In this document: positions 52,857 through 60,945 of the stretch, one piece after another | Numbering within the stretch: position 1 is the first letter of the stretch | How the letters are laid out: each line of letters opens with the position of its first letter | DNA from: Basidiobolus meristosporus CBS 931.73 | Lineage: Eukaryota > Fungi > Basidiobolomycota | Assembly: GCA_002104905.1 (NCBI GenBank) | Contig: MCFE01000462.1 | Location: forward strand, 1-64,000 | Direction of reading: 5' to 3' | Length of the DNA: 64,000 bases | The notes under the pieces: generated by a model | Databases searched by the model: none | Told to the model about the DNA's origin: nothing | What the model saw: the letters and a program-made list of their open reading frames with translations, nothing else | Program-made: the position numbers and the translations under genes

Positions 52857-53214
52857 GACTCGGAAAATGGGGAAAATGGGGAATACTGGTGATGGGAGTG
52901 AAGGGCCCTGATTTTATATGTTCTCCCTTTCATTCTAAGAATCTACTTGAAGGTGGTGAATTGCGCTTGAAAGAGCGCTCAAAGCAATTCGTTGTCAATC
53001 CTCTACCAGTTTCAACAAACTGCTTGTTGACTACAATAGGTGATTCCTAGAATCCATGGCATTTATCACTTGACACCAGTCTGGTTCCAAGATCTACGCA
53101 CAATATGTTTCATCATTTTGGGTTGTTCCGCATCCGTGACGATCAGGTACTCAATGGGAATAAATCCCGTCTACCGGTTGGACTCAGACAGAGCTCCTCT
53201 TACTTCAGGTGAAC

Positions 53215-54417
53215 ATGGTGGTTAACGCAACGATAGGTGCTCTGGTGTCCTCCGTAGGAAGAAACCTGGCTGATTCGCTTACACACAGCGTCAGCCCCAC
53301 CGCGAATGTGCTGTTCTCCCCATTGTCCATATTTGCCGCGCTCTTCATGCTCCTGTTTGGCACTGCCGAGAGAAGCCAGAGCCAGTCAGAGCTTCTACGC
53401 TTCTTCGGCTCCCCGGATACCCACAGCAGCTCGCTCCCTAACCTGGCTGAGTCCTTCCATAACTTCTTCCAGCCGTTGATGGGTGACCACGAGGGTGTCG
53501 GGCCATCCGAGGACCACAACGCCACCTTCCTGCTGGCCAACTCGCTGTGGGGAGAAGCATTCAAGCAAAGCTACGTTGACCTGAACAGGGAGAAACTCTT
53601 TGCCTCTGTATTCTCACAGACTCCCACCGCGACGAAGGTGAATCAATGGGTGGCGAAGAACACCAAGAACCATATCACCGGGATCCTTCCACCAGGATTT
53701 CGTCTGGATCCACAAAGCCTGTTGCTTGTGAACACAGTCTTCTTCCATGGGATGTGGAAGAATGAGTTCAAGGCCAGTCGAACCACCTCGGAGGAGTTCC
53801 AGGTGCTGTCGGGAGCACCGATCAAGGTGAAGATGATGAACTCATTCCGGGAGAGGTGGGCCTATTCGGAGAGCGAGAAGTACCAGGTGCTGGATATGCC
53901 GTACACCGACGACCGGTTCGTGGCAACCGTAGTGCTACCAAGGGAGGTGCAATCCTTCGCCAGTTTCACCCACAGTCTCAGCGAAGAGGATTGGACCGAT
54001 ATTCTGGAAGGAGATAGGTATACACAGAAAGTGAACCTTCACCTACCGAAGTTCGACCTTGAGCAGGAGCTGAATCTCAACCAGGCGCTGCAGAAGGGAG
54101 GGGTCAGAGAGATATTCGGAAGCAGCGCCAGGCTTGACAATCTTTCGAAGTTCCGATGTATGTCAGCGATGTGCTGCACAAGTGTCGCATCGAGGTTAAT
54201 GAAAAAGGTAACGGGAAAGTGAAGCAAGTATATCAGCATCCACTAACCTCTTTTTACAGGCTCCAAAGCGAGCGCAGCAACCGCGGTGGTCATTCAGGTG
54301 CTATCCTCGGCTAGACCAAAGCCAACACCGGAAATGCGATGTAATCGGCCTTTTTTGTTTGTTATTCGAACCAAAACCGGGGTTCCTATGTTCATTGCTT
54401 ACATCGCCAAACCTTGA
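53215..54417 (+). CDS. Serpin, copy 1 (no signal peptide, 2 exons); 1-nt deletion frameshift at about 54146-54153
   Basis: NVLFSPLSIFAAL, VNQWVAKNT, LLLVNTVFFHGMWKNEF, QVLDMPY, LHLPKFDLE. After the frameshift: PMYVSDVLHKCRIEVNEK, intron 54208-54259, then GSKASAATAVVIQVL-SS and CNRPFLFVIR...KP*. Confidence 0.93.
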
Positions 54418-54572
54418 TTCTTTCTGAATAAATCCCTCCGATCCCTCCTTATAACAGACTGAGGGATATTCCAGAATATCTTAACAAGGAATCTCCGATT
54501 TTTTTTTCATTGATCCACTTGCTAAAAGTCATTCAGAAGAGCTTGGAAACCTATTAACTACTCTTGCACACC

Positions 54573-54761
54573 ATGTCCCAACAAGCTCATCCCATGCGCA
54601 TTGAGATCGTCTCAACCAAATCCCTTTCGACACACAGTGCTTCCAAGCGTATGAAGAACTTTCTCGCCGAAAACACAGCGGTCCATTCCCTCCCCAACTC
54701 AGTAGTGTACCAATTGAATGAGATCAATCGTGCCATCAAGAAACCCTCAAAGAAGGAGTAG
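54573..54761 (+). CDS. 62-aa protein, possibly an RNA polymerase I subunit A14 (Rpa14/Ker1)-like protein
   Basis: PMRIEIVSTKSLS...SKRMKNFLAEN...NSVVYQLNEINRAIK follows the recalled A14 pattern (P..I....S..A...L..FI ... S..L.QLKRIQR.L). Similarity is weak. Confidence 0.4.
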   Translation: MSQQAHPMRIEIVSTKSLSTHSASKRMKNFLAENTAVHSLPNSVVYQLNEINRAIKKPSKKE

Positions 54762-55105
54762 CTCAGTGTCCTTAGCATATGTATATATAGCCAGTTAGAC
54801 CAAATAGATTCTGATAGTTGCTTTCCACTGTTACCTGCCTGTTTCACCTGACAATAGAAACTTACATAAATATTCCACTTTCCGCAATTTAGTCATTAGA
54901 ATTATTCCACTCTGCCAATATAATATTCACTGGTGATCGTACCCAATGATTAGCATTTTGGGACCAATTTTTTTCTGGTTTCATTAATCTAAATGACCGG
55001 CTGGACGTGGAAGAATTTTTGAATAAAACCCTAGAGACTTGGGAAATTTGTTTGTACCGAAGGACGGCACTGGAAGCACTATATCCCTTGCCTTAGACTA
55101 TTCCC

Positions 55106-58100
55106 ATGATGCAGTATTTAAGGCAGACGGCCCGACGTTCTCTCGTGAGCAATGTCTACTCTCACCTGGGTAGACGTGGAACAATGATTACCCGGCCTTT
55201 CAGTATACATAGACTTCAACAAGTGCAAAAGAGCTCTACTGTGGATTCAGACAGTCACAAATTACCGCAACCGGCAAACATAAAGCTCAAGAATGATTTC
55301 AAGCTGTCCGTGAACTTCCTGGCCAAATACAAAAACGCCATTCCTCCATTTGGTTTCAATGGTCTTGGCGAGCTTGTTTATCGTAGAACATATTCGCGTT
55401 TAAAGACAAATGGCGAACGGGAGCAATGGTACCGTGGCATGCTTCGGGCTTTCAGGGACGCGCCTCTAACCATTTTGTTGTGCTGAAGGTGGGAGACAGT
55501 CGAGCGAGTGGTCAACGGAACCTACAATATTCAAAAGAAGTGGATTGAGCAGAACGACCTGGGTTGGGATGCTTACAAGGTATGACTCTCAAGTGTGTGG
55601 TCTGTGGGATGCATTTGCTGAAACCGCTATCACTTCACAAGGCCCAAATGTCTGCGCAGCGAATGTACGATCGGATTTTCAATATGAAGTTCCTGCCTCC
55701 TGGCAGAGGTCAGTTTCGAGAGAGCTCTTCAGTTTCCCACAGCCCGTATTGATAGTTTGTTACAGGATTGTGGGCCATGGGATCTCCCTTGACCGAGGAG
55801 CGAGGAATATTCGCTGCTTTAAACAATTGCGCTTTTGTCAGCACGGAGAGTATGTGGGATGGCAGGAATGCCCCCAGTCGTCCATTTACGTTTTTGATGG
55901 ACGCCACCATGCTTGGGTAGGTTATCAAAAGCACAAGCCCCAGGGACAACCACTCATTTCATCACAGTGTAGGAGTCGGCTTCGACACAAAAGGGGCCAC
56001 TATAGCCGAAGAGCGCGGCAAAGTGGTTACCGAGCCCAATGTCTCCAAAGGCTCATTGGTCTACACCATCCCTGATTCCCGTGAAGGTAACGTTGATACG
56101 CTTGGGCACGTCTCAGTAGATTCTAATTCTGCGCAATGAAAGGTTGGGTCAGGTCGGTCGAGCTTCTTATAGACTCCTACTTCGATCCCAAGATGAGTTC
56201 CCCGGTAAGAATATGGTGATTTTCCGATAGCTCCCGTTCGTGCAACTCAACATCTGTCTTCTCAGGAGTTCAACTACGATCAAATCCGACCAGCCGGACT
56301 CCCAATCAAAGTAAGTTCCTACAACCCTCCTCGGCCCTCACGCAGGTGATTTACTATTCCAACAACCGCAGGGATTTGGTGGCGTCTCTTCTGGACCAGG
56401 CCCATTGAAAGACCTTCACGATCATATTCGCGCGACTCTGAACAAAAACGTCGGGGCTCCGTTGACCGTGACTTCCATCGTGGACTTGATGAACCTGATA
56501 GGGAAATGCATCGTGAGCGGCAACGTTAGAAGAACAGCAGAGATTGCTTTCGGCGACCCGATGGATGACGAATACATCGATCTGAAGAACTACGAAGTGA
56601 ATCCGCACCGTAGCGAGTACGGCTGGACTAGCAACAATTCCGTAAGCGAGCATAGCCAAGCGTTCGTTGCTGCGTTGAGCTAACCCGTCGTGATGTAGGT
56701 CTTTGCTCAGCTTGGAATGGACTACACGAAGGTGTGCAGCCGTGTGATCAAGAATGGAGAGCCAGGATTTGCGTGGCTGGAGAATGCTCGGAGCTATGGC
56801 CGAATGAGCGAGCCTATGGTACAGCACCTACTTCGATAGAGAACAAATTCACAGCTTTGCTGACTTTATGCGTAGAACATGAAGGATGCTCGCGCTATGG
56901 GAGGAAACCCTTGCCTGGAGCAGACGTTGGAGTCCTTCGAATTGTGCTGCTTGGTCGAGGTGTTTCCATCCAACCACAATTCTCTAGAGGATTTCTTGGA
57001 AACGCTGGAGTCGGCATTTCTGTATGCAAAGACAGTCACCCTAGGCAACACCCATTGGAAGGAAAGCAATCAGGTTATGCTCCGAAACCGACGCATCGGC
57101 ACAGGGCTCAGCGGGATCGCTCAGTTCATCAGCAAGAGAGGTATTGTTTGTGGATCTTGTGGATGCATGGGGCAGTCGGAATAACCATATATGGTGTGCA
57201 GGCTTACATGAGTTCAAAAACTGGTGCGAGGAGGGATACAAGGCTGTGCAGCAAATCGACAAACAGTAAGTTCCAAGCCCCGCTGACTCCATCGCCCCAG
57301 GCTAATCGATCTCTCAGGGTTTCCGAGTGGTTCTGCATCCCACGCTCCATCAAAACCACCACAGTGAAGCCAAGTGGCACCGTCTCTCTGTTGGCCGGCG
57401 GTTAGTCCAGACGTTAGTTGGAATGATGTGACAGGCGACTAAACCAGATTCGTTGTGTAGCCACGCCTGGTATGCACTACCCTGAAAGCCGGTATTGCAT
57501 TCGTCGTGTGAGGATAGCCAAGGGCTCGGAGATGATCAGTGCTCTGAATAAGGCCGGGTACAAGATCGAGCAGGATGTTGGTATGTGGATGTGGGAACCT
57601 TCTTTGTCCAGCAGTTACCGACCTAACATGGATGTAGTTGAGCCGAACTCTGTTGTGGTGGAGATCCCGATCGACCACGGGGACGGGCTTCGCGGTCTGA
57701 AGGAGGTCAGCATGTGGGAGCAGCTGAGCCTGGCCGCTTTCATGCAGAAGTACTGGTCCGATAACCAGGTCAGCTGCACCGTAACCCTCGACCCCACCCT
57801 CGAGGGACCCCATCTGAAGCACGCATTGGATTATTTCCAATACCAACTCAAAGGTACGTTTTCTTCTGGGCCACCGAACCTCCGCCGCTCTAACCCCGAG
57901 TGTAGGTGTCTCCTTCCTGCCGCGTCTGCCCCTGGGCGCCTATCCTCAGATGCCATATGAGGCCATAGATGAGGAGACTTACTATGAACTGACTTCGCGC
58001 ATCTCCAACCCCACCCCACACTCCCCCAAGCCTCCACGCACCCACCAGAAGCTCTTGAAGCGCCTCGTGGCTGACGGTGGGGTTCAAATACCCAAGCCCG

Positions 58101-58213
58101 ACTTCCGGCACGTCAAAGAGGAGGCCACGGACCCCGAGATGGAGCGCTACTGCGACTCCAGTAGCTGTGTTATCGAATCAAGCCCACGCATCACCTCCAA
58201 GCCGGAACAATAG
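55106..58213 (+). CDS. nrdJ: Class II (adenosylcobalamin-dependent) ribonucleotide reductase, monomeric RTPR type, 15 exons
   Basis: PPFGFNGLGELVYRRTYSR, FLPPGRGLWAMG, ALNNCAF, MLGVGVGFDTKG, GNVRRTAEI, GWTSNNS, NGEPG, GGNPCLEQTLESFELCCLVE, NRRIGTGLSG, TVKPSGTVSLLAG, YWSDNQVSCTV, C-terminal YCDSSSC. Fourteen GT-AG introns all phase in frame. Confidence 0.95.
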
Positions 58214-58392
58214 CCCCGTTATATCTGATATCTCGTTGTACCAATAGAAGTGATTTCAAGTATCTCAATAAAGCCAACTGCCCCGCCACGCTCACAACGG
58301 TCCGAATGGTGTGTAGATGATTATATTGTACGGTTTATTACTACTCAAAGATATACACTCTGTTTCATGATACATACGATGCTGGTTATGCT

Positions 58393-60945
58393 TTACTTTC
58401 TAAGATCTTTCACTCTGACGGCGACTGCGTTTCGGTGGGCCTCTAAGCCTTCGATTTCGGCCAATCTCATGACCGAGTCGGCAAGACGGTCCAGGCCATC
58501 ACTGGTCAGCTGTTGGCTGGTGATGTACTTCAGGAAAGTGTCGGTGTTGACGCCCGAATACATTCTGGAGTATCCGTATGTGGGAAGAGTGTGGTTTGTT
58601 CCGGAGGCGTAATCACCACAGCTCTCTGGTGACCATGGGCCGACGAAGACGGAGCCAGCATTGTCGACCTGGTCGACGTACTTCTCGGCCTCCTCAAGGT
58701 GAAGAATAAGATGCTCAGGTGCGTAATCGTTGGAGAAGCTCATGGCCTCCTCCATGGTGTTCACATGGAGGGCATAGCTCTTGGGGATGGACTGGCGGAC
58801 GATGTCCACTCTGGGCAATCTGCTGGCTTGGCTATGGACCTCATCCTCAATCGCCTTGAACTTCTCTTCAGTGAGGTTCACCGCGACCAGCACAACCTGA
58901 CTGTCAACTCCATGCTCCGCTTGGGACAGCAGATCGGAGGCGACATAGCTGGGTGTGCATGTGGAATCAGCGATCACCAAGAGCTCAGATGGCCCGGCGG
59001 GCATATCGATGGATGTCATTGCTGAGCTGTCGTTCTGAACAATCATCTTGGCCGCGGTGACGTATTGGTTGCCAGGTCCACAGATCTTGTCAACCTTGGG
59101 GACTGATTCGGTACCGTAGGCCATAGCAGCGACTGCCTGAGCTCCACCAGCACAGACCACCATGGATGCACCAACCTTGTCAGCAACGTACAATACCTCG
59201 GGTACGACGGTGCCATCCTTTCTAGGAGGACTGGCGATAACGATCTCCTTGCACCCGGCGACCTTGGCTGGGATGCCTAACATGAGAGTGGTGGAGGGCA
59301 ACACAGCGGTGCCACCGGGAACGTACAAGCCCACCCGTTCAATGGGTCTGCTGAATCGGGAGCAGGTGACTCCGGGCATGGTCTCCACCACCAGGGTGCT
59401 ACGATCGTATTGCGCATCGTGGAATTTGTAGATGTTCTCGTAAGCTTGGTCGATGGCTGCCTTGGTTTGCTCGTCGATCTGCATCAACTCCTTGGGGAAT
59501 GGCGCTTTGACAACAGGGTTGCTCAACTTGACTCCATCGAACTTCTCGGTGAAGTGGAGGATGCCTTGGTCGCCCTTGGCCCGGACCTCTTGCAAGATGG
59601 GCTGGACGCGAGCGATGATCTCCTCGGATTTGATGATGGGTCTGAGCAACAAAGACTTGCGTGTTTCTTCGTCGATTTCCGCGTTGGAGTGGACCCGCAT
59701 CTGAATTCTGTCCCCGGGTTGTGGGGCTGCGGGGCTGGAGGCTGCTTCCTCTGACTTCTTGGTCTCGGGCTCGGCCTTCTTCACCTCGTATTGGGGCTTG
59801 GCGTTTCCGGGTCTTCTGGTGATCTTCTTGGATCTCTTGTTCAGATGTCTTTCTACGTCGGACAAGGTGACTCCGTTGGCCACGCACTTGGTAAGTGCGA
59901 AGTAGATCAGATCAGCAGCCTCCCAGGCGATCTCCTCGCGGTCGGTGGCGTCGCACAATTCGTGGGCCTCCTCGATGATCTTGGAGTGCAGGAGGTTGGA
60001 CTCATTGAAAAGGCGCGCGGTGTACGAGCCTTGAGGAGCGGACTCCTTGCGTTGGGTCAAGGTGGAGTACAACGCGGTGATGCCGTCGTCTACGCCGAAG
60101 CAGGTGCGGGTGTTCAGGTGGCAGAATCCGGATCCGTTTTGACGGACGGTGAAGCGTAAGGCGTCGCGATCGCAGTCGGTATCGATCTTCACCAACTCCT
60201 GGGTTGCTCCAGAGCTGGCTCCCTTGTACCAGAGGCCACGCTTTCTCGACTGGTAGACACCGGTGCCAGTCTTGATGGATTCGTTAAGACTCTCGACTGA
60301 GGAGTATACCAAACCCAGGCACACGCCTTGTTCGTCGACCACAATGGTGGTGAATAGACCATCCGGGCGATCGGATACCAGGGTGGCGCTCAGGGCCTTT
60401 CCAACCTTGTCCGAGTCGAAGGTGAGTTGGCTGACTGGGACGCTGACGTCCATGTTTTTGGCGCTCAACTTTTCGAGCACTGCTTGGACTGGCTCCACAC
60501 CGTCAACCACGATGCGTACCGCACCGCCATCGCGTAACAGAGTAGCCTCGGTCGAGAGCGACTCCAGGGCAGCGAGGGCTTGCTCAGTTGGGTTCTCTAG
60601 CTCCAGTACGATGACTGATACTTGGCTGGCATACTTCTCTACCCTAGCCACCAGATCGGTGGCCTCGTTGACAGATAATACGACGCCAAGTCGGCTTTGA
60701 GGGAACTCGAATAGCTCGGGAACAAGGCTCGCCTCCTCGAACAGGACTTTGGACGCACCAGCATCTAGAAGCTTCAAGGTAGCCTCCACAACATCGTCTA
60801 TTCCGTCCAGCTTCACCCAGCTGGCACCTTCGGGCAAAGCGGAGTCTGCTGACTTCACGCCGGTCAGGTACTTCTCGGGGAAGACCGAGAGACGGGAGTA
60901 GGTCTCAGAGTTGATGTCTGAGGAGATATATTTGGGTATCAACAT
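58393..60945 (-). CDS. HIS4: Trifunctional histidine biosynthesis protein (PR-AMP cyclohydrolase / PR-ATP pyrophosphohydrolase / histidinol dehydrogenase), 850 aa, intronless
   Basis: YQSRKRGLWYKGASSGATQEL, DCDRDAL, SYTARLF, KIIEEAHEL, GLYVPGGTAVLPST, ICGPGNQYV, IDMPAGPSE, SQAEHG, YAPEHL, GDYASGTNHTLPT. Confidence 0.98.
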   Translation of the reverse strand: MLIPKYISSDINSETYSRLSVFPEKYLTGVKSADSALPEGASWVKLDGIDDVVEATLKLLDAGASKVLFEEASLVPELFEFPQSRLGVVLSVNEATDLVARVEKYASQVSVIVLELENPTEQALAALESLSTEATLLRDGGAVRIVVDGVEPVQAVLEKLSAKNMDVSVPVSQLTFDSDKVGKALSATLVSDRPDGLFTTIVVDEQGVCLGLVYSSVESLNESIKTGTGVYQSRKRGLWYKGASSGATQELVKIDTDCDRDALRFTVRQNGSGFCHLNTRTCFGVDDGITALYSTLTQRKESAPQGSYTARLFNESNLLHSKIIEEAHELCDATDREEIAWEAADLIYFALTKCVANGVTLSDVERHLNKRSKKITRRPGNAKPQYEVKKAEPETKKSEEAASSPAAPQPGDRIQMRVHSNAEIDEETRKSLLLRPIIKSEEIIARVQPILQEVRAKGDQGILHFTEKFDGVKLSNPVVKAPFPKELMQIDEQTKAAIDQAYENIYKFHDAQYDRSTLVVETMPGVTCSRFSRPIERVGLYVPGGTAVLPSTTLMLGIPAKVAGCKEIVIASPPRKDGTVVPEVLYVADKVGASMVVCAGGAQAVAAMAYGTESVPKVDKICGPGNQYVTAAKMIVQNDSSAMTSIDMPAGPSELLVIADSTCTPSYVASDLLSQAEHGVDSQVVLVAVNLTEEKFKAIEDEVHSQASRLPRVDIVRQSIPKSYALHVNTMEEAMSFSNDYAPEHLILHLEEAEKYVDQVDNAGSVFVGPWSPESCGDYASGTNHTLPTYGYSRMYSGVNTDTFLKYITSQQLTSDGLDRLADSVMRLAEIEGLEAHRNAVAVRVKDLRK

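What the first reader, a model, noticed from the sequence alone, without database searches (positions are those of the whole stretch)
55106..55245. Class II B12-dependent RNR with an apparent mitochondrial targeting presequence
The 46 residues before the first acidic residue (MMQYLRQTARRSLVSNVYSHLGRRGTMITRPFSIHRLQQVQKSSTV) contain 7 Arg, 1 Lys, many Ser/Thr and an R-x-F|S processing-like motif. They precede the conserved NrdJ start (PPFGFNGLG). Eukaryotic dNTP synthesis is normally cytosolic or nuclear via the oxygen-dependent class Ia enzyme, whereas adenosylcobalamin is made and used in mitochondria (MMAB, methylmalonyl-CoA mutase). This suggests an intramitochondrial, oxygen-independent dNTP supply. 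Class II RNRs in non-Dikarya fungi are known; mitochondrial targeting is my inference and I know of no description of it.
Basis: partly seen in the sequence, partly recalled or inferred. Interest (0 to 1): 0.82.

Follow-up and report, generated by a model that had tools for sequence, protein, structure and literature searches.

The report
B12 ribonucleotide reductase with mitochondrial-type leader
A gut fungus (Basidiobolus meristosporus) encodes a vitamin-B12-dependent enzyme that makes DNA building blocks, and its conserved front end looks like a mitochondrial import signal, which suggests, without proving, that these fungi and several amoebae make DNA precursors inside mitochondria.

Summary
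A 15-exon gene at 55106-58213 (+) on Basidiobolus meristosporus contig MCFE01000462.1 encodes a 767-aa monomeric adenosylcobalamin ribonucleoside-triphosphate reductase (RTPR, TIGR02505). The first 46 residues have no acidic residue, 7 Arg and 1 Lys, and an R30-P-F-S33 motif.

The public model (ORX89267.1, 741 aa) starts at Met27 and is probably truncated:
- The B. ranarum orthologue (772 aa) starts at the ATG matching 55109 and has ATA where our Met27 lies.
- It keeps the reading frame through 9-nt and 3-nt indels.
- It keeps T-R-P-F-S-I with only synonymous changes.

Bacterial relatives lack any extension. Glomeromycotina, Endogone, Umbelopsis, Coemansia, Blastocladiomycota, Gonapodya, three amoebozoans and Rigifila carry unalignable but acid-poor, Arg/Ser-rich leaders, enriched for R-x-[FYL]-[SA].

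Both Basidiobolus species also hold two other paralogue types, one with a BED-zinc-finger/NLS-like front and one with a short front. This suggests sorting to different compartments.

Mitochondrial import is inferred, not shown. No trained predictor, RNA or proteomic data were available, and amphipathicity was not above shuffles. Nine literature searches found no description of it.

The scan noted this same stretch in an overlapping window (s1-218901) and the paralogues on other contigs.

The parts
55094..55096 (+). In-frame TAG four codons upstream of the first ATG; it sets the upstream limit of the ORF
   Evidence: Sequence read. B. ranarum likewise has an in-frame TAG five codons before its ATG.
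55106..55111 (+). Two tandem ATG codons. The second (55109) is the conserved start and has a purine at -3
   Evidence: In DNA alignment A1, 55109 aligns with the B. ranarum start ATG, and 55106 aligns with GTG.
55106..55201 (+). Predicted mitochondrial matrix presequence, aa 1-32: no D/E, 6 Arg, Ser/Thr-rich
   Evidence: AF2 models it as coil with pLDDT 53-60. No Pfam family matches.
55184..55186 (+). Met27, the start codon of the deposited model ORX89267.1 (P0102, 741 aa); probably not the main start
   Evidence: maps the annotated gene to 55184-58213. The aligned codon in B. ranarum is ATA.
55193..55204 (+). R30-P31-F32-S33, a candidate MPP (R-2) and Icp55 processing site. The predicted mature N-terminus is F32 or S33
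   Evidence: T-R-P-F-S-I is identical in B. ranarum, with three synonymous differences only. R-x-[FYL]-[SA] is enriched in orthologue leaders.
55202..55303 (+). Linker, aa 33-66, between the leader and the catalytic body
55106..58213 (+). Whole gene. 15 exons: 55106-55428, 55489-55579, 55642-55708, 55766-55916, 55968-56086, 56143-56204, 56266-56310, 56372-56641, 56699-56818, 56876-57140, 57202-57265, 57318-57400, 57461-57580, 57638-57853, 57906-58213. It has 14 GT-AG introns of 51-62 nt and encodes 767 aa
   Evidence: Hand-built model. Downstream of Met27 it is identical to the deposited protein P0102.
55304..55785 (+). RNR_Alpha domain (PF17975), aa 67-167, spliced over exons 1-4
56906..56959 (+). 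Active-site stretch N-P-C-L-E-Q ... E-L-C-C. It aligns with the N-P-C-G-E and E-P-C-N stretches of the L. leichmannii enzyme, whose cysteines I take from memory to be the thiyl and redox cysteines
   Evidence: Alignment to 1L1L; coordinates.
58151..58168 (+). C-terminal C-D-S-S-S-C pair, the tail that accepts electrons from thioredoxin in this family
   Evidence: The tail is kept in fungal orthologues. The role is assigned from my knowledge of L. leichmannii RTPR.

Best explanation
The gene encodes an intact monomeric adenosylcobalamin-dependent ribonucleoside-triphosphate reductase. Translation starts at the conserved ATG 55109 (or at 55106), not at the annotated Met27. The first 31-32 residues are a cleavable mitochondrial matrix presequence. 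It would be imported through TOM/TIM23, cut by the matrix processing peptidase after R30-P31, and perhaps trimmed of F32 by an Icp55-type aminopeptidase.

The mature enzyme would then reduce NTPs to dNTPs inside mitochondria, independently of oxygen. It would use adenosylcobalamin made there and mitochondrial thioredoxin acting through its C-terminal Cys pair.

Shown here: the gene, the family, catalytic residues conserved against the solved L. leichmannii enzyme (1L1L), the true start, conservation of the leader and its motif, and recurrence of the same kind of leader in many eukaryotic lineages. Inferred: import, cleavage site, cofactor and reductant source, and physiological role.
For: Family:
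- P0102 scores 367 bits against the TIGR02505 cut-off of 340.
- It matches 1L1L at E = 5e-101, with the N-P-C-x-E stretch, the aligned cysteines and the C-terminal Cys pair kept.
- Pfam finds RNR_Alpha, RNR-II_ins_dom and the barrel domain.

Start codon:
- The B. ranarum orthologue P0382 begins MQY... at the aligned ATG and has ATA at our Met27.
- Its indels of 9 and 3 nt keep the reading frame.
- The TRPFSI codons differ only synonymously.
- Orthologues P0001, P0106, P0108, P0116, P0162, P0120 and P0121 have no internal Met before the catalytic domain, so their leaders must be translated.

Leader character:
- An acid-free first 25 aa with at least 3 K/R occurs in 53 of 123 extension-bearing sequences. 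It occurs in 2 of 182 extension-less (bacterial-type) sequences and in 37 of 1734 windows taken from the enzyme bodies.
- In the first 30 aa of 23 lineage representatives, D+E is 2.8% against 12.1% in the body, and Arg is 10.7% against 6.0%.
- R-x-[FYL]-[SA] occurs in 14 of 30 named leaders against 5.2 expected from shuffles; none of 2000 shuffles reached 14.
- [RK]-x-[FYL]-[SA]-[ST] occurs in 7 of 23 lineage representatives against 1.6 expected, p = 0.0005.
- Complete ORFs derived from transcripts of Rigifila and Thecamoeba, and transcript-derived N-terminal ORFs of Clastostelium and Amoeba proteus, show such leaders.

Context:
- The genome has methylmalonyl-CoA mutase, MeaB and three cobalamin adenosyltransferases (PMC8085122, Table S1).
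- The three paralogue types have different N-termini. This one has the shortest branch, which fits retention of the ancestral state.
Against: - No trained predictor (TargetP, MitoFates) could be run.
- The helical hydrophobic moment of the leader is not above shuffles of the same composition, and AF2 gives coil.
- No RNA run was listed, so the transcription start is unknown.
- Taken alone, the composition has a chance rate of 1-5% among open frames in this window.
- Pro at the residue before the proposed cut may be unfavourable for MPP; this is from my memory and is uncertain.
- Some orthologue models lack such a leader: Calcarisporiella, Martensiomyces, Amoeboaphelidium and the annotated Umbelopsis PMI_123 and U. 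isabellina models.
- There is no proteomic or microscopy evidence in any species.
Confidence: 0.6

Rival explanations
1. The extension is translated but is not a mitochondrial signal. It would be a disordered, basic, Ser/Thr-rich N-terminal tail with some other role, such as regulation, turnover, interaction or another destination.
For: - AF2 gives coil at low confidence for aa 1-60.
- Amphipathicity is not above shuffles.
- The sequence is not conserved between lineages.
- The other paralogues show that this enzyme tolerates varied N-terminal additions.
Against: - Independent lineages keep the composition (acid-free, Arg-rich) rather than the sequence. They also end the leader with R-x-[FYL]-[SA] more often than shuffles do. 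That pattern is characteristic of matrix presequences.
- There is no hydrophobic core for a signal peptide, and by eye no PTS2 or classical NLS.
Confidence: 0.2
2. The deposited model is right. Translation starts at Met27 (55184), the upstream 78 nt are 5' UTR, and the enzyme is cytosolic.
For: - The JGI/NCBI model ORX89267.1 starts there.
- Met27 has A at -3 (AACAATGA).
- No RNA data place the transcription start.
Against: - B. ranarum has ATA at that codon and no other in-frame ATG before the catalytic domain.
- The frame stays open in both species, with indels in multiples of three.
- The conserved RPFS motif would sit 4 residues from such a start.
- A scanning ribosome meets 55106 and 55109 first, if they are in the mRNA.
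Confidence: 0.08
3. Dual products: leaky scanning past 55106/55109 gives a long mitochondrial form and a short Met27 form that stays in the cytosol.
For: - The first ATG has a poor context (C at -3), while Met27 has a good one.
- An Umbelopsis-like fragment (P0006) likewise has a Met directly after its leader.
Against: - Met27 is not conserved in B. ranarum.
- Basidiobolus already has separate paralogues without a leader (P0114, P0385).
- The second ATG has A at -3.
Confidence: 0.1

Closest known systems
Lactobacillus leichmannii ribonucleoside-triphosphate reductase (PDB 1L1L; TIGR02505 RTPR)
   Same: Same family and architecture: RNR_Alpha, insertion domain and barrel. The catalytic Cys/Asn/Glu residues and the C-terminal Cys pair are kept.
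   Different: The bacterial enzyme starts at our residue ~61. It has no leader and none of the ~40-residue Pro/Lys-rich segment that precedes the C-terminal Cys pair here.
Class II RNR of non-Dikarya fungi, oomycetes, Dictyostelium and Euglena (PMC8085122, PMC3605638, PMC3019208)
   Same: This gene is one of the five B. meristosporus class II RNRs already catalogued; ORX89267.1 is in that paper's supplement.
   Different: Those papers do not discuss where the protein is located. The Dictyostelium paper calls the role of class II 'enigmatic'. The leader and its recurrence are not mentioned.
Mitochondrial adenosylcobalamin enzymes of animals: methylmalonyl-CoA mutase, with MMAB and MMAA
   Same: Nuclear-encoded, AdoCbl-dependent, carrying cleavable N-terminal matrix presequences; this is from my own knowledge. 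B. meristosporus has homologues of the mutase, MeaB and three adenosyltransferases.
   Different: A different fold and reaction. Their localisation is shown experimentally; this one is only predicted.
BED-zinc-finger-tagged and short-N-terminus NrdJ paralogues of Basidiobolus (P0112/P0386; P0114/P0385/P0384)
   Same: Same enzyme and the same lineage-specific clade (SH-aLRT 96). All types are present in both B. meristosporus and B. ranarum.
   Different: Their N-termini are different. One is ~170 aa long, with a CxxC...HxxxC finger and a KKRK (B. meristosporus) or KKRK-like (B. ranarum) motif. The other is a short Ser-rich stretch. Neither resembles a presequence.

Membership tests
Monomeric AdoCbl ribonucleoside-triphosphate reductase (RTPR, TIGR02505) | Scores above the curated equivalog cut-off | tested here: met
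   P0102 scores 367.4 bits against a cut-off of 340.05. The exon pieces also hit RTPR.
Monomeric AdoCbl ribonucleoside-triphosphate reductase (RTPR, TIGR02505) | Thiyl-radical Cys in N-P-C-x-E, the redox Cys pair, and the C-terminal Cys pair | tested here: met
   Alignment to 1L1L shows LNNC, NPCLEQ and ELCC conserved. CDSSSC is at aa 748-753.
Monomeric AdoCbl ribonucleoside-triphosphate reductase (RTPR, TIGR02505) | Insertion domain that mimics the dimer interface (monomeric subtype) | tested here: met
   PF21995 RNR-II_ins_dom, E = 4e-13.
Monomeric AdoCbl ribonucleoside-triphosphate reductase (RTPR, TIGR02505) | AdoCbl-dependent reduction of NTPs | not testable with these tools
   Needs an enzyme assay.
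MPP-cleaved mitochondrial matrix presequence | N-terminal, 15-60 aa, outside the folded domain, absent from bacterial homologues | tested here: met
   About 60 extra residues relative to 1L1L and the Bacteroidota-type relatives. Modelled as coil with low pLDDT.
MPP-cleaved mitochondrial matrix presequence | No acidic residues, net positive charge, rich in Arg and Ser/Thr | tested here: met
   aa 1-46 have 0 D/E, 7 R and 1 K. The same holds in B. ranarum up to aa 48 and in most orthologue leaders.
MPP-cleaved mitochondrial matrix presequence | Amphipathic helix potential | tested here: inconclusive
   Maximum helical hydrophobic moment is 0.53-0.70. Shuffles of the same composition reach it 16-43% of the time (B. 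meristosporus) or 22-79% (B. ranarum). AF2 predicts no helix.
MPP-cleaved mitochondrial matrix presequence | Arg at -2 or -3 of a processing site, R-x-(F/Y/L)-(S/A) | tested here: met
   R30-P-F-S33 is conserved in B. ranarum with synonymous changes only. The motif is enriched across lineages.
MPP-cleaved mitochondrial matrix presequence | Positive score from a trained predictor (TargetP, MitoFates) | not testable with these tools
   No such predictor is on hand; only my own heuristics were used.
MPP-cleaved mitochondrial matrix presequence | Import into mitochondria and cleavage | not testable with these tools
   Needs a GFP fusion, in vitro import or N-terminomics.

The most novel reading that the evidence does not exclude
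[quoted passage not shown] It would hold in early-diverging fungi, Amoebozoa and CRuMs. Many B12-using eukaryotes would then have an oxygen-independent de novo dNTP synthesis pathway inside mitochondria, fed by matrix NTPs, AdoCbl and thioredoxin, that animals and Dikarya lack. In Basidiobolus, duplication then produced additional nuclear (BED finger plus NLS-like) and leaderless forms. This would explain the 'enigmatic' role of class II RNR in organisms that also have class I.
Probability: 0.45. Interest if true: 0.85.

Novelty: new variant of a known kind. Interest (0 to 1): 0.72.

Why it matters
In the systems studied so far, mitochondrial DNA replication is thought to depend on dNTPs imported from the cytosol or salvaged; no ribonucleotide reductase is established inside mitochondria. 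A B12-dependent, oxygen-independent NTP reductase carrying a conserved matrix-type leader in many fungi and amoebae would have three consequences:
- It would add a new route for organellar dNTP supply.
- It would give a reason why these organisms keep a class II enzyme beside class I.
- It would link it to the compartment where adenosylcobalamin is made.

The idea is directly testable with a leader-GFP fusion or mitochondrial proteomics. On the practical side, the deposited gene model for this protein, and probably several orthologue models, appear to be N-terminally truncated.

Tried and rejected
- A first automatic minimal-intron path gave wrong introns. One acceptor chosen by hand was wrong and was corrected to 55967.
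- The word search with exon 1 could only see fragments of 59-187 aa. Full-length relatives were reached only after a stop-free 651-aa exon of an orthologue (L003:5449-7401) was found.
- The big search was run with P0017 rather than our own exon, to separate relatives better. It returned representatives without names, and only some could be named.
- Amphipathicity was tested and found uninformative.
- A signal peptide, PTS2 and a classical NLS were considered by eye and rejected for lack of a hydrophobic core or motif.
- Pfam finds nothing in the first 65 aa, and nothing in the BED-like N-terminus of P0112.
- I did not retrieve the Dictyostelium discoideum NrdJ N-terminus. It would rank below hundreds of bacterial hits in the one search that remained, so that search was not spent.
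- Literature: nine searches found no paper on mitochondrial targeting of a class II RNR. Subscription journals are not covered.

Full report
**What is there**

The window is contig MCFE01000462.1 of assembly GCA_002104905.1. Proteins on it are named Basidiobolus meristosporus CBS 931.73.

Reading 54400-58400 and removing 14 GT-AG introns of 51-62 nt gives a 15-exon gene at 55106-58213 (+) that encodes 767 aa. From Met27 onward, the product is identical to the deposited protein ORX89267.1 (P0102, 741 aa).

The protein belongs to a well-defined family:
- It scores 367 bits against the TIGR02505 RTPR equivalog cut-off of 340.
- It has the Pfam domains RNR_Alpha, RNR-II_ins_dom and the barrel.
- It matches the Lactobacillus leichmannii enzyme 1L1L at E = 5e-101, with the LNNC, NPC-x-E and second-Cys positions conserved.
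- It keeps the C-terminal CDSSSC pair.

So it is an intact monomeric adenosylcobalamin ribonucleoside-triphosphate reductase. Class II RNR in non-Dikarya fungi is already known. This very accession is among five B. meristosporus class II RNRs listed in PMC8085122.

**The observation**

An in-frame TAG lies four codons upstream of 55106. The bacterial enzyme begins at our residue ~61, and RNR_Alpha at residue 67, so about 60 residues are additional. An AF2 model of exon 1 gives coil with pLDDT 53-60 for residues 1-60, and the first helix at 69-76.

By itself the composition is only modestly unusual. In this window, 4.9% of ATG-started 46-codon open stretches lack D/E, and 1.3% also have at least 8 K/R.

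**Which start codon**

The deposited model starts at Met27, at 55184. The B. ranarum orthologue settles the question. P0382 (KAK9709202.1, 772 aa) sits in the same 90% cluster, and its locus L006 has a syntenic upstream 62-aa gene.
- Its protein begins MQYMLLSSQHILRRPVGYAFAYLRRSRAITTRPFSILG... and is acid-free to residue 48.
- In the DNA alignment, its ATG aligns with our second ATG (55109), and our first ATG aligns with GTG.
- Both species have a purine at -3 of the shared ATG.
- Our Met27 codon aligns with ATA, and B. ranarum has no other in-frame ATG before the catalytic domain.
- The two indels inside the leader are 9 and 3 nt, so the frame is kept.
- The T-R-P-F-S-I codons differ only at synonymous sites (ACC/ACT, CGG/CGA, TTC/TTT).

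The leader is therefore coding and under constraint, and the JGI model is most likely N-truncated. No RNA run was listed for this stretch, so the transcription start itself is not observed.

**Relatives**

A word search with exon 1 returned 99 N-terminal fragments. Bacterial-type sequences start 17-23 residues before the FGFNG motif. The ones most like ours carry extensions of 40-130 aa with net charge +4 to +12.

A two-exon orthologue on Logan contigs (L003) supplied a stop-free 651-aa reference. This retrieved named full-length relatives.

Leaders that cannot be aligned with ours, but are acid-poor and Arg/Ser/Thr-rich, occur in:
- Rhizophagus, Funneliformis and Ambispora
- Endogone, Bifiguratus and Umbelopsis vinacea
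- Coemansia
- Allomyces and Blastocladiella
- Gonapodya

They also occur in transcript-derived ORFs of Rigifila (CRuMs) and the amoebozoans Thecamoeba, Clastostelium and Amoeba proteus. Several of these have no internal Met before the catalytic domain, so the leader must be translated.

The numbers:
- An acid-free first 25 aa with at least 3 K/R is found in 53 of 123 extension-bearing sequences. It is found in 2 of 182 extension-less sequences and in 37 of 1734 windows from the enzyme bodies.
- In 23 lineage representatives, the first 30 aa hold 2.8% D+E against 12.1% in the body, and 10.7% Arg against 6.0%.
- R-x-[FYL]-[SA] occurs in 14 of 30 named leaders against 5.2 expected from shuffles; none of 2000 shuffles reached that.
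- [RK]-x-[FYL]-[SA]-[ST] occurs in 7 of 23 lineage representatives against 1.6 expected, p = 0.0005.

From my own knowledge, this motif is the signature of cleavage by the matrix processing peptidase at R-2 followed by Icp55 trimming (Vogtle et al. 2009, cited from memory).

Exceptions exist. The Calcarisporiella, Martensiomyces and Amoeboaphelidium models have acidic or neutral N-termini. Two annotated Umbelopsis models start at what looks like an internal Met.

**Paralogues**

B. meristosporus and B. ranarum both hold three types:
- this leader-bearing one (P0102 / P0382);
- a form of 879/880 aa whose ~170-aa N-terminus has a CxxC...HxxxC finger and a KKRK (B. meristosporus) or KKRK-like (B. 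ranarum) motif (P0112 / P0386). Earlier notes of this scan flagged it as a BED finger plus NLS;
- a form with a short Ser-rich N-terminus (P0114, P0385 / P0384).

In a quick IQ-TREE tree of 43 sequences the three types form one clade (SH-aLRT 96), and ours has the shortest branch, 0.19. This fits duplication within the Basidiobolus lineage, with this copy keeping the ancestral leader-bearing state and the others gaining new N-termini. That reading is inference from one quick tree.

**Mechanism proposed**

The precursor starts at 55109 (or 55106). The basic, acid-free leader directs import into the matrix. MPP cuts after R30-P31 and F32 may be trimmed. The mature enzyme reduces NTPs to dNTPs using AdoCbl, and thioredoxin through the C-terminal Cys pair.

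The genome encodes methylmalonyl-CoA mutase, MeaB and three cobalamin adenosyltransferases. In animals these act in mitochondria (my own knowledge). All steps after translation are inferred.

**Weak points**

- The hydrophobic moment of the leader is not above shuffles of the same composition.
- No trained predictor was available.
- There is no RNA, proteomic or imaging evidence.
- Pro before the proposed cut may be unfavourable.

**What is known**

None of the three RNR papers I read discusses localisation of class II RNR: PMC8085122, PMC3605638 (which calls the Dictyostelium class II role enigmatic) and PMC3019208. Nine full-text searches found nothing on a mitochondrial class II RNR. The library lacks most subscription journals, so a prior description cannot be excluded.

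**Verdict**

- Localisation remains to be shown.

I class it as a new variant of a known kind, with interest 0.72.

Noticed in passing
window 53105-54761 and 54573-54761; L006 2219-2407: The deposited serpin model (324 aa) ends at 54761, the stop of a small 62-aa ORF (MSQQAHPMRIEIV...). In B. ranarum that ORF is conserved and annotated as a separate gene just upstream of the RNR. The B. meristosporus serpin model may wrongly fuse two genes.
   Followed up: partly
P0134, P0135, P0148, P0178, P0186, P0207, P0217; tree: RTPRs that I take to be bacterial from their length (~660 aa) and lack of an extension (only P0217 is named, Cytophagales) are 64-66% identical to the L003 fungal orthologue used as query. 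In the quick tree they sit among eukaryotic lineages (Rigifila, Thecamoeba, fungi). The direction and number of transfers between bacteria and eukaryotes look open.
   Followed up: partly
P0128 (Amoeboaphelidium), P0288, P0292, P0311, P0327: Several RTPRs are interrupted by large insertions at conserved active-site stretches (after GNVRR, or after NNC or NPC). In P0128 this carries a Pfam intein hit (PF14890). They look like intein-containing RNRs.
   Followed up: no
P0260 and P0306: Two unnamed eukaryote-like RTPR fragments carry an extra small conserved N-terminal module (W-x-V-x-R-x-D-D-x-G-x-x-F ... G-H-K-Q-x-Y-F-V-[RK]-Q). It lies between a basic leader and an R-R-A-F-S-T motif, upstream of the catalytic domain.
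   Followed up: no
P0103, P0105 versus P0388, P0006, P0004: The annotated Umbelopsis sp. PMI_123 and U. isabellina proteins start about 12-14 residues before the conserved domain. U. vinacea and Logan fragments of close relatives have an upstream basic leader ending in C-R-S-[FL]-S-S. The shorter models may be N-truncated, as in Basidiobolus.
   Followed up: partly
window 58213-58393: The RNR gene and the single-exon trifunctional HIS4-like gene (58393-60945, minus strand, 850 aa) converge. Only about 180 nt separate their stop codons.
   Followed up: no
PMC8085122 Table S1: B. meristosporus has the highest class II RNR count of the fungi on the first page of that table that I read (5), and three cobalamin adenosyltransferases. 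I saw four RNR proteins here (P0102, P0112, P0114, P0385) and did not identify the fifth.
   Followed up: partly
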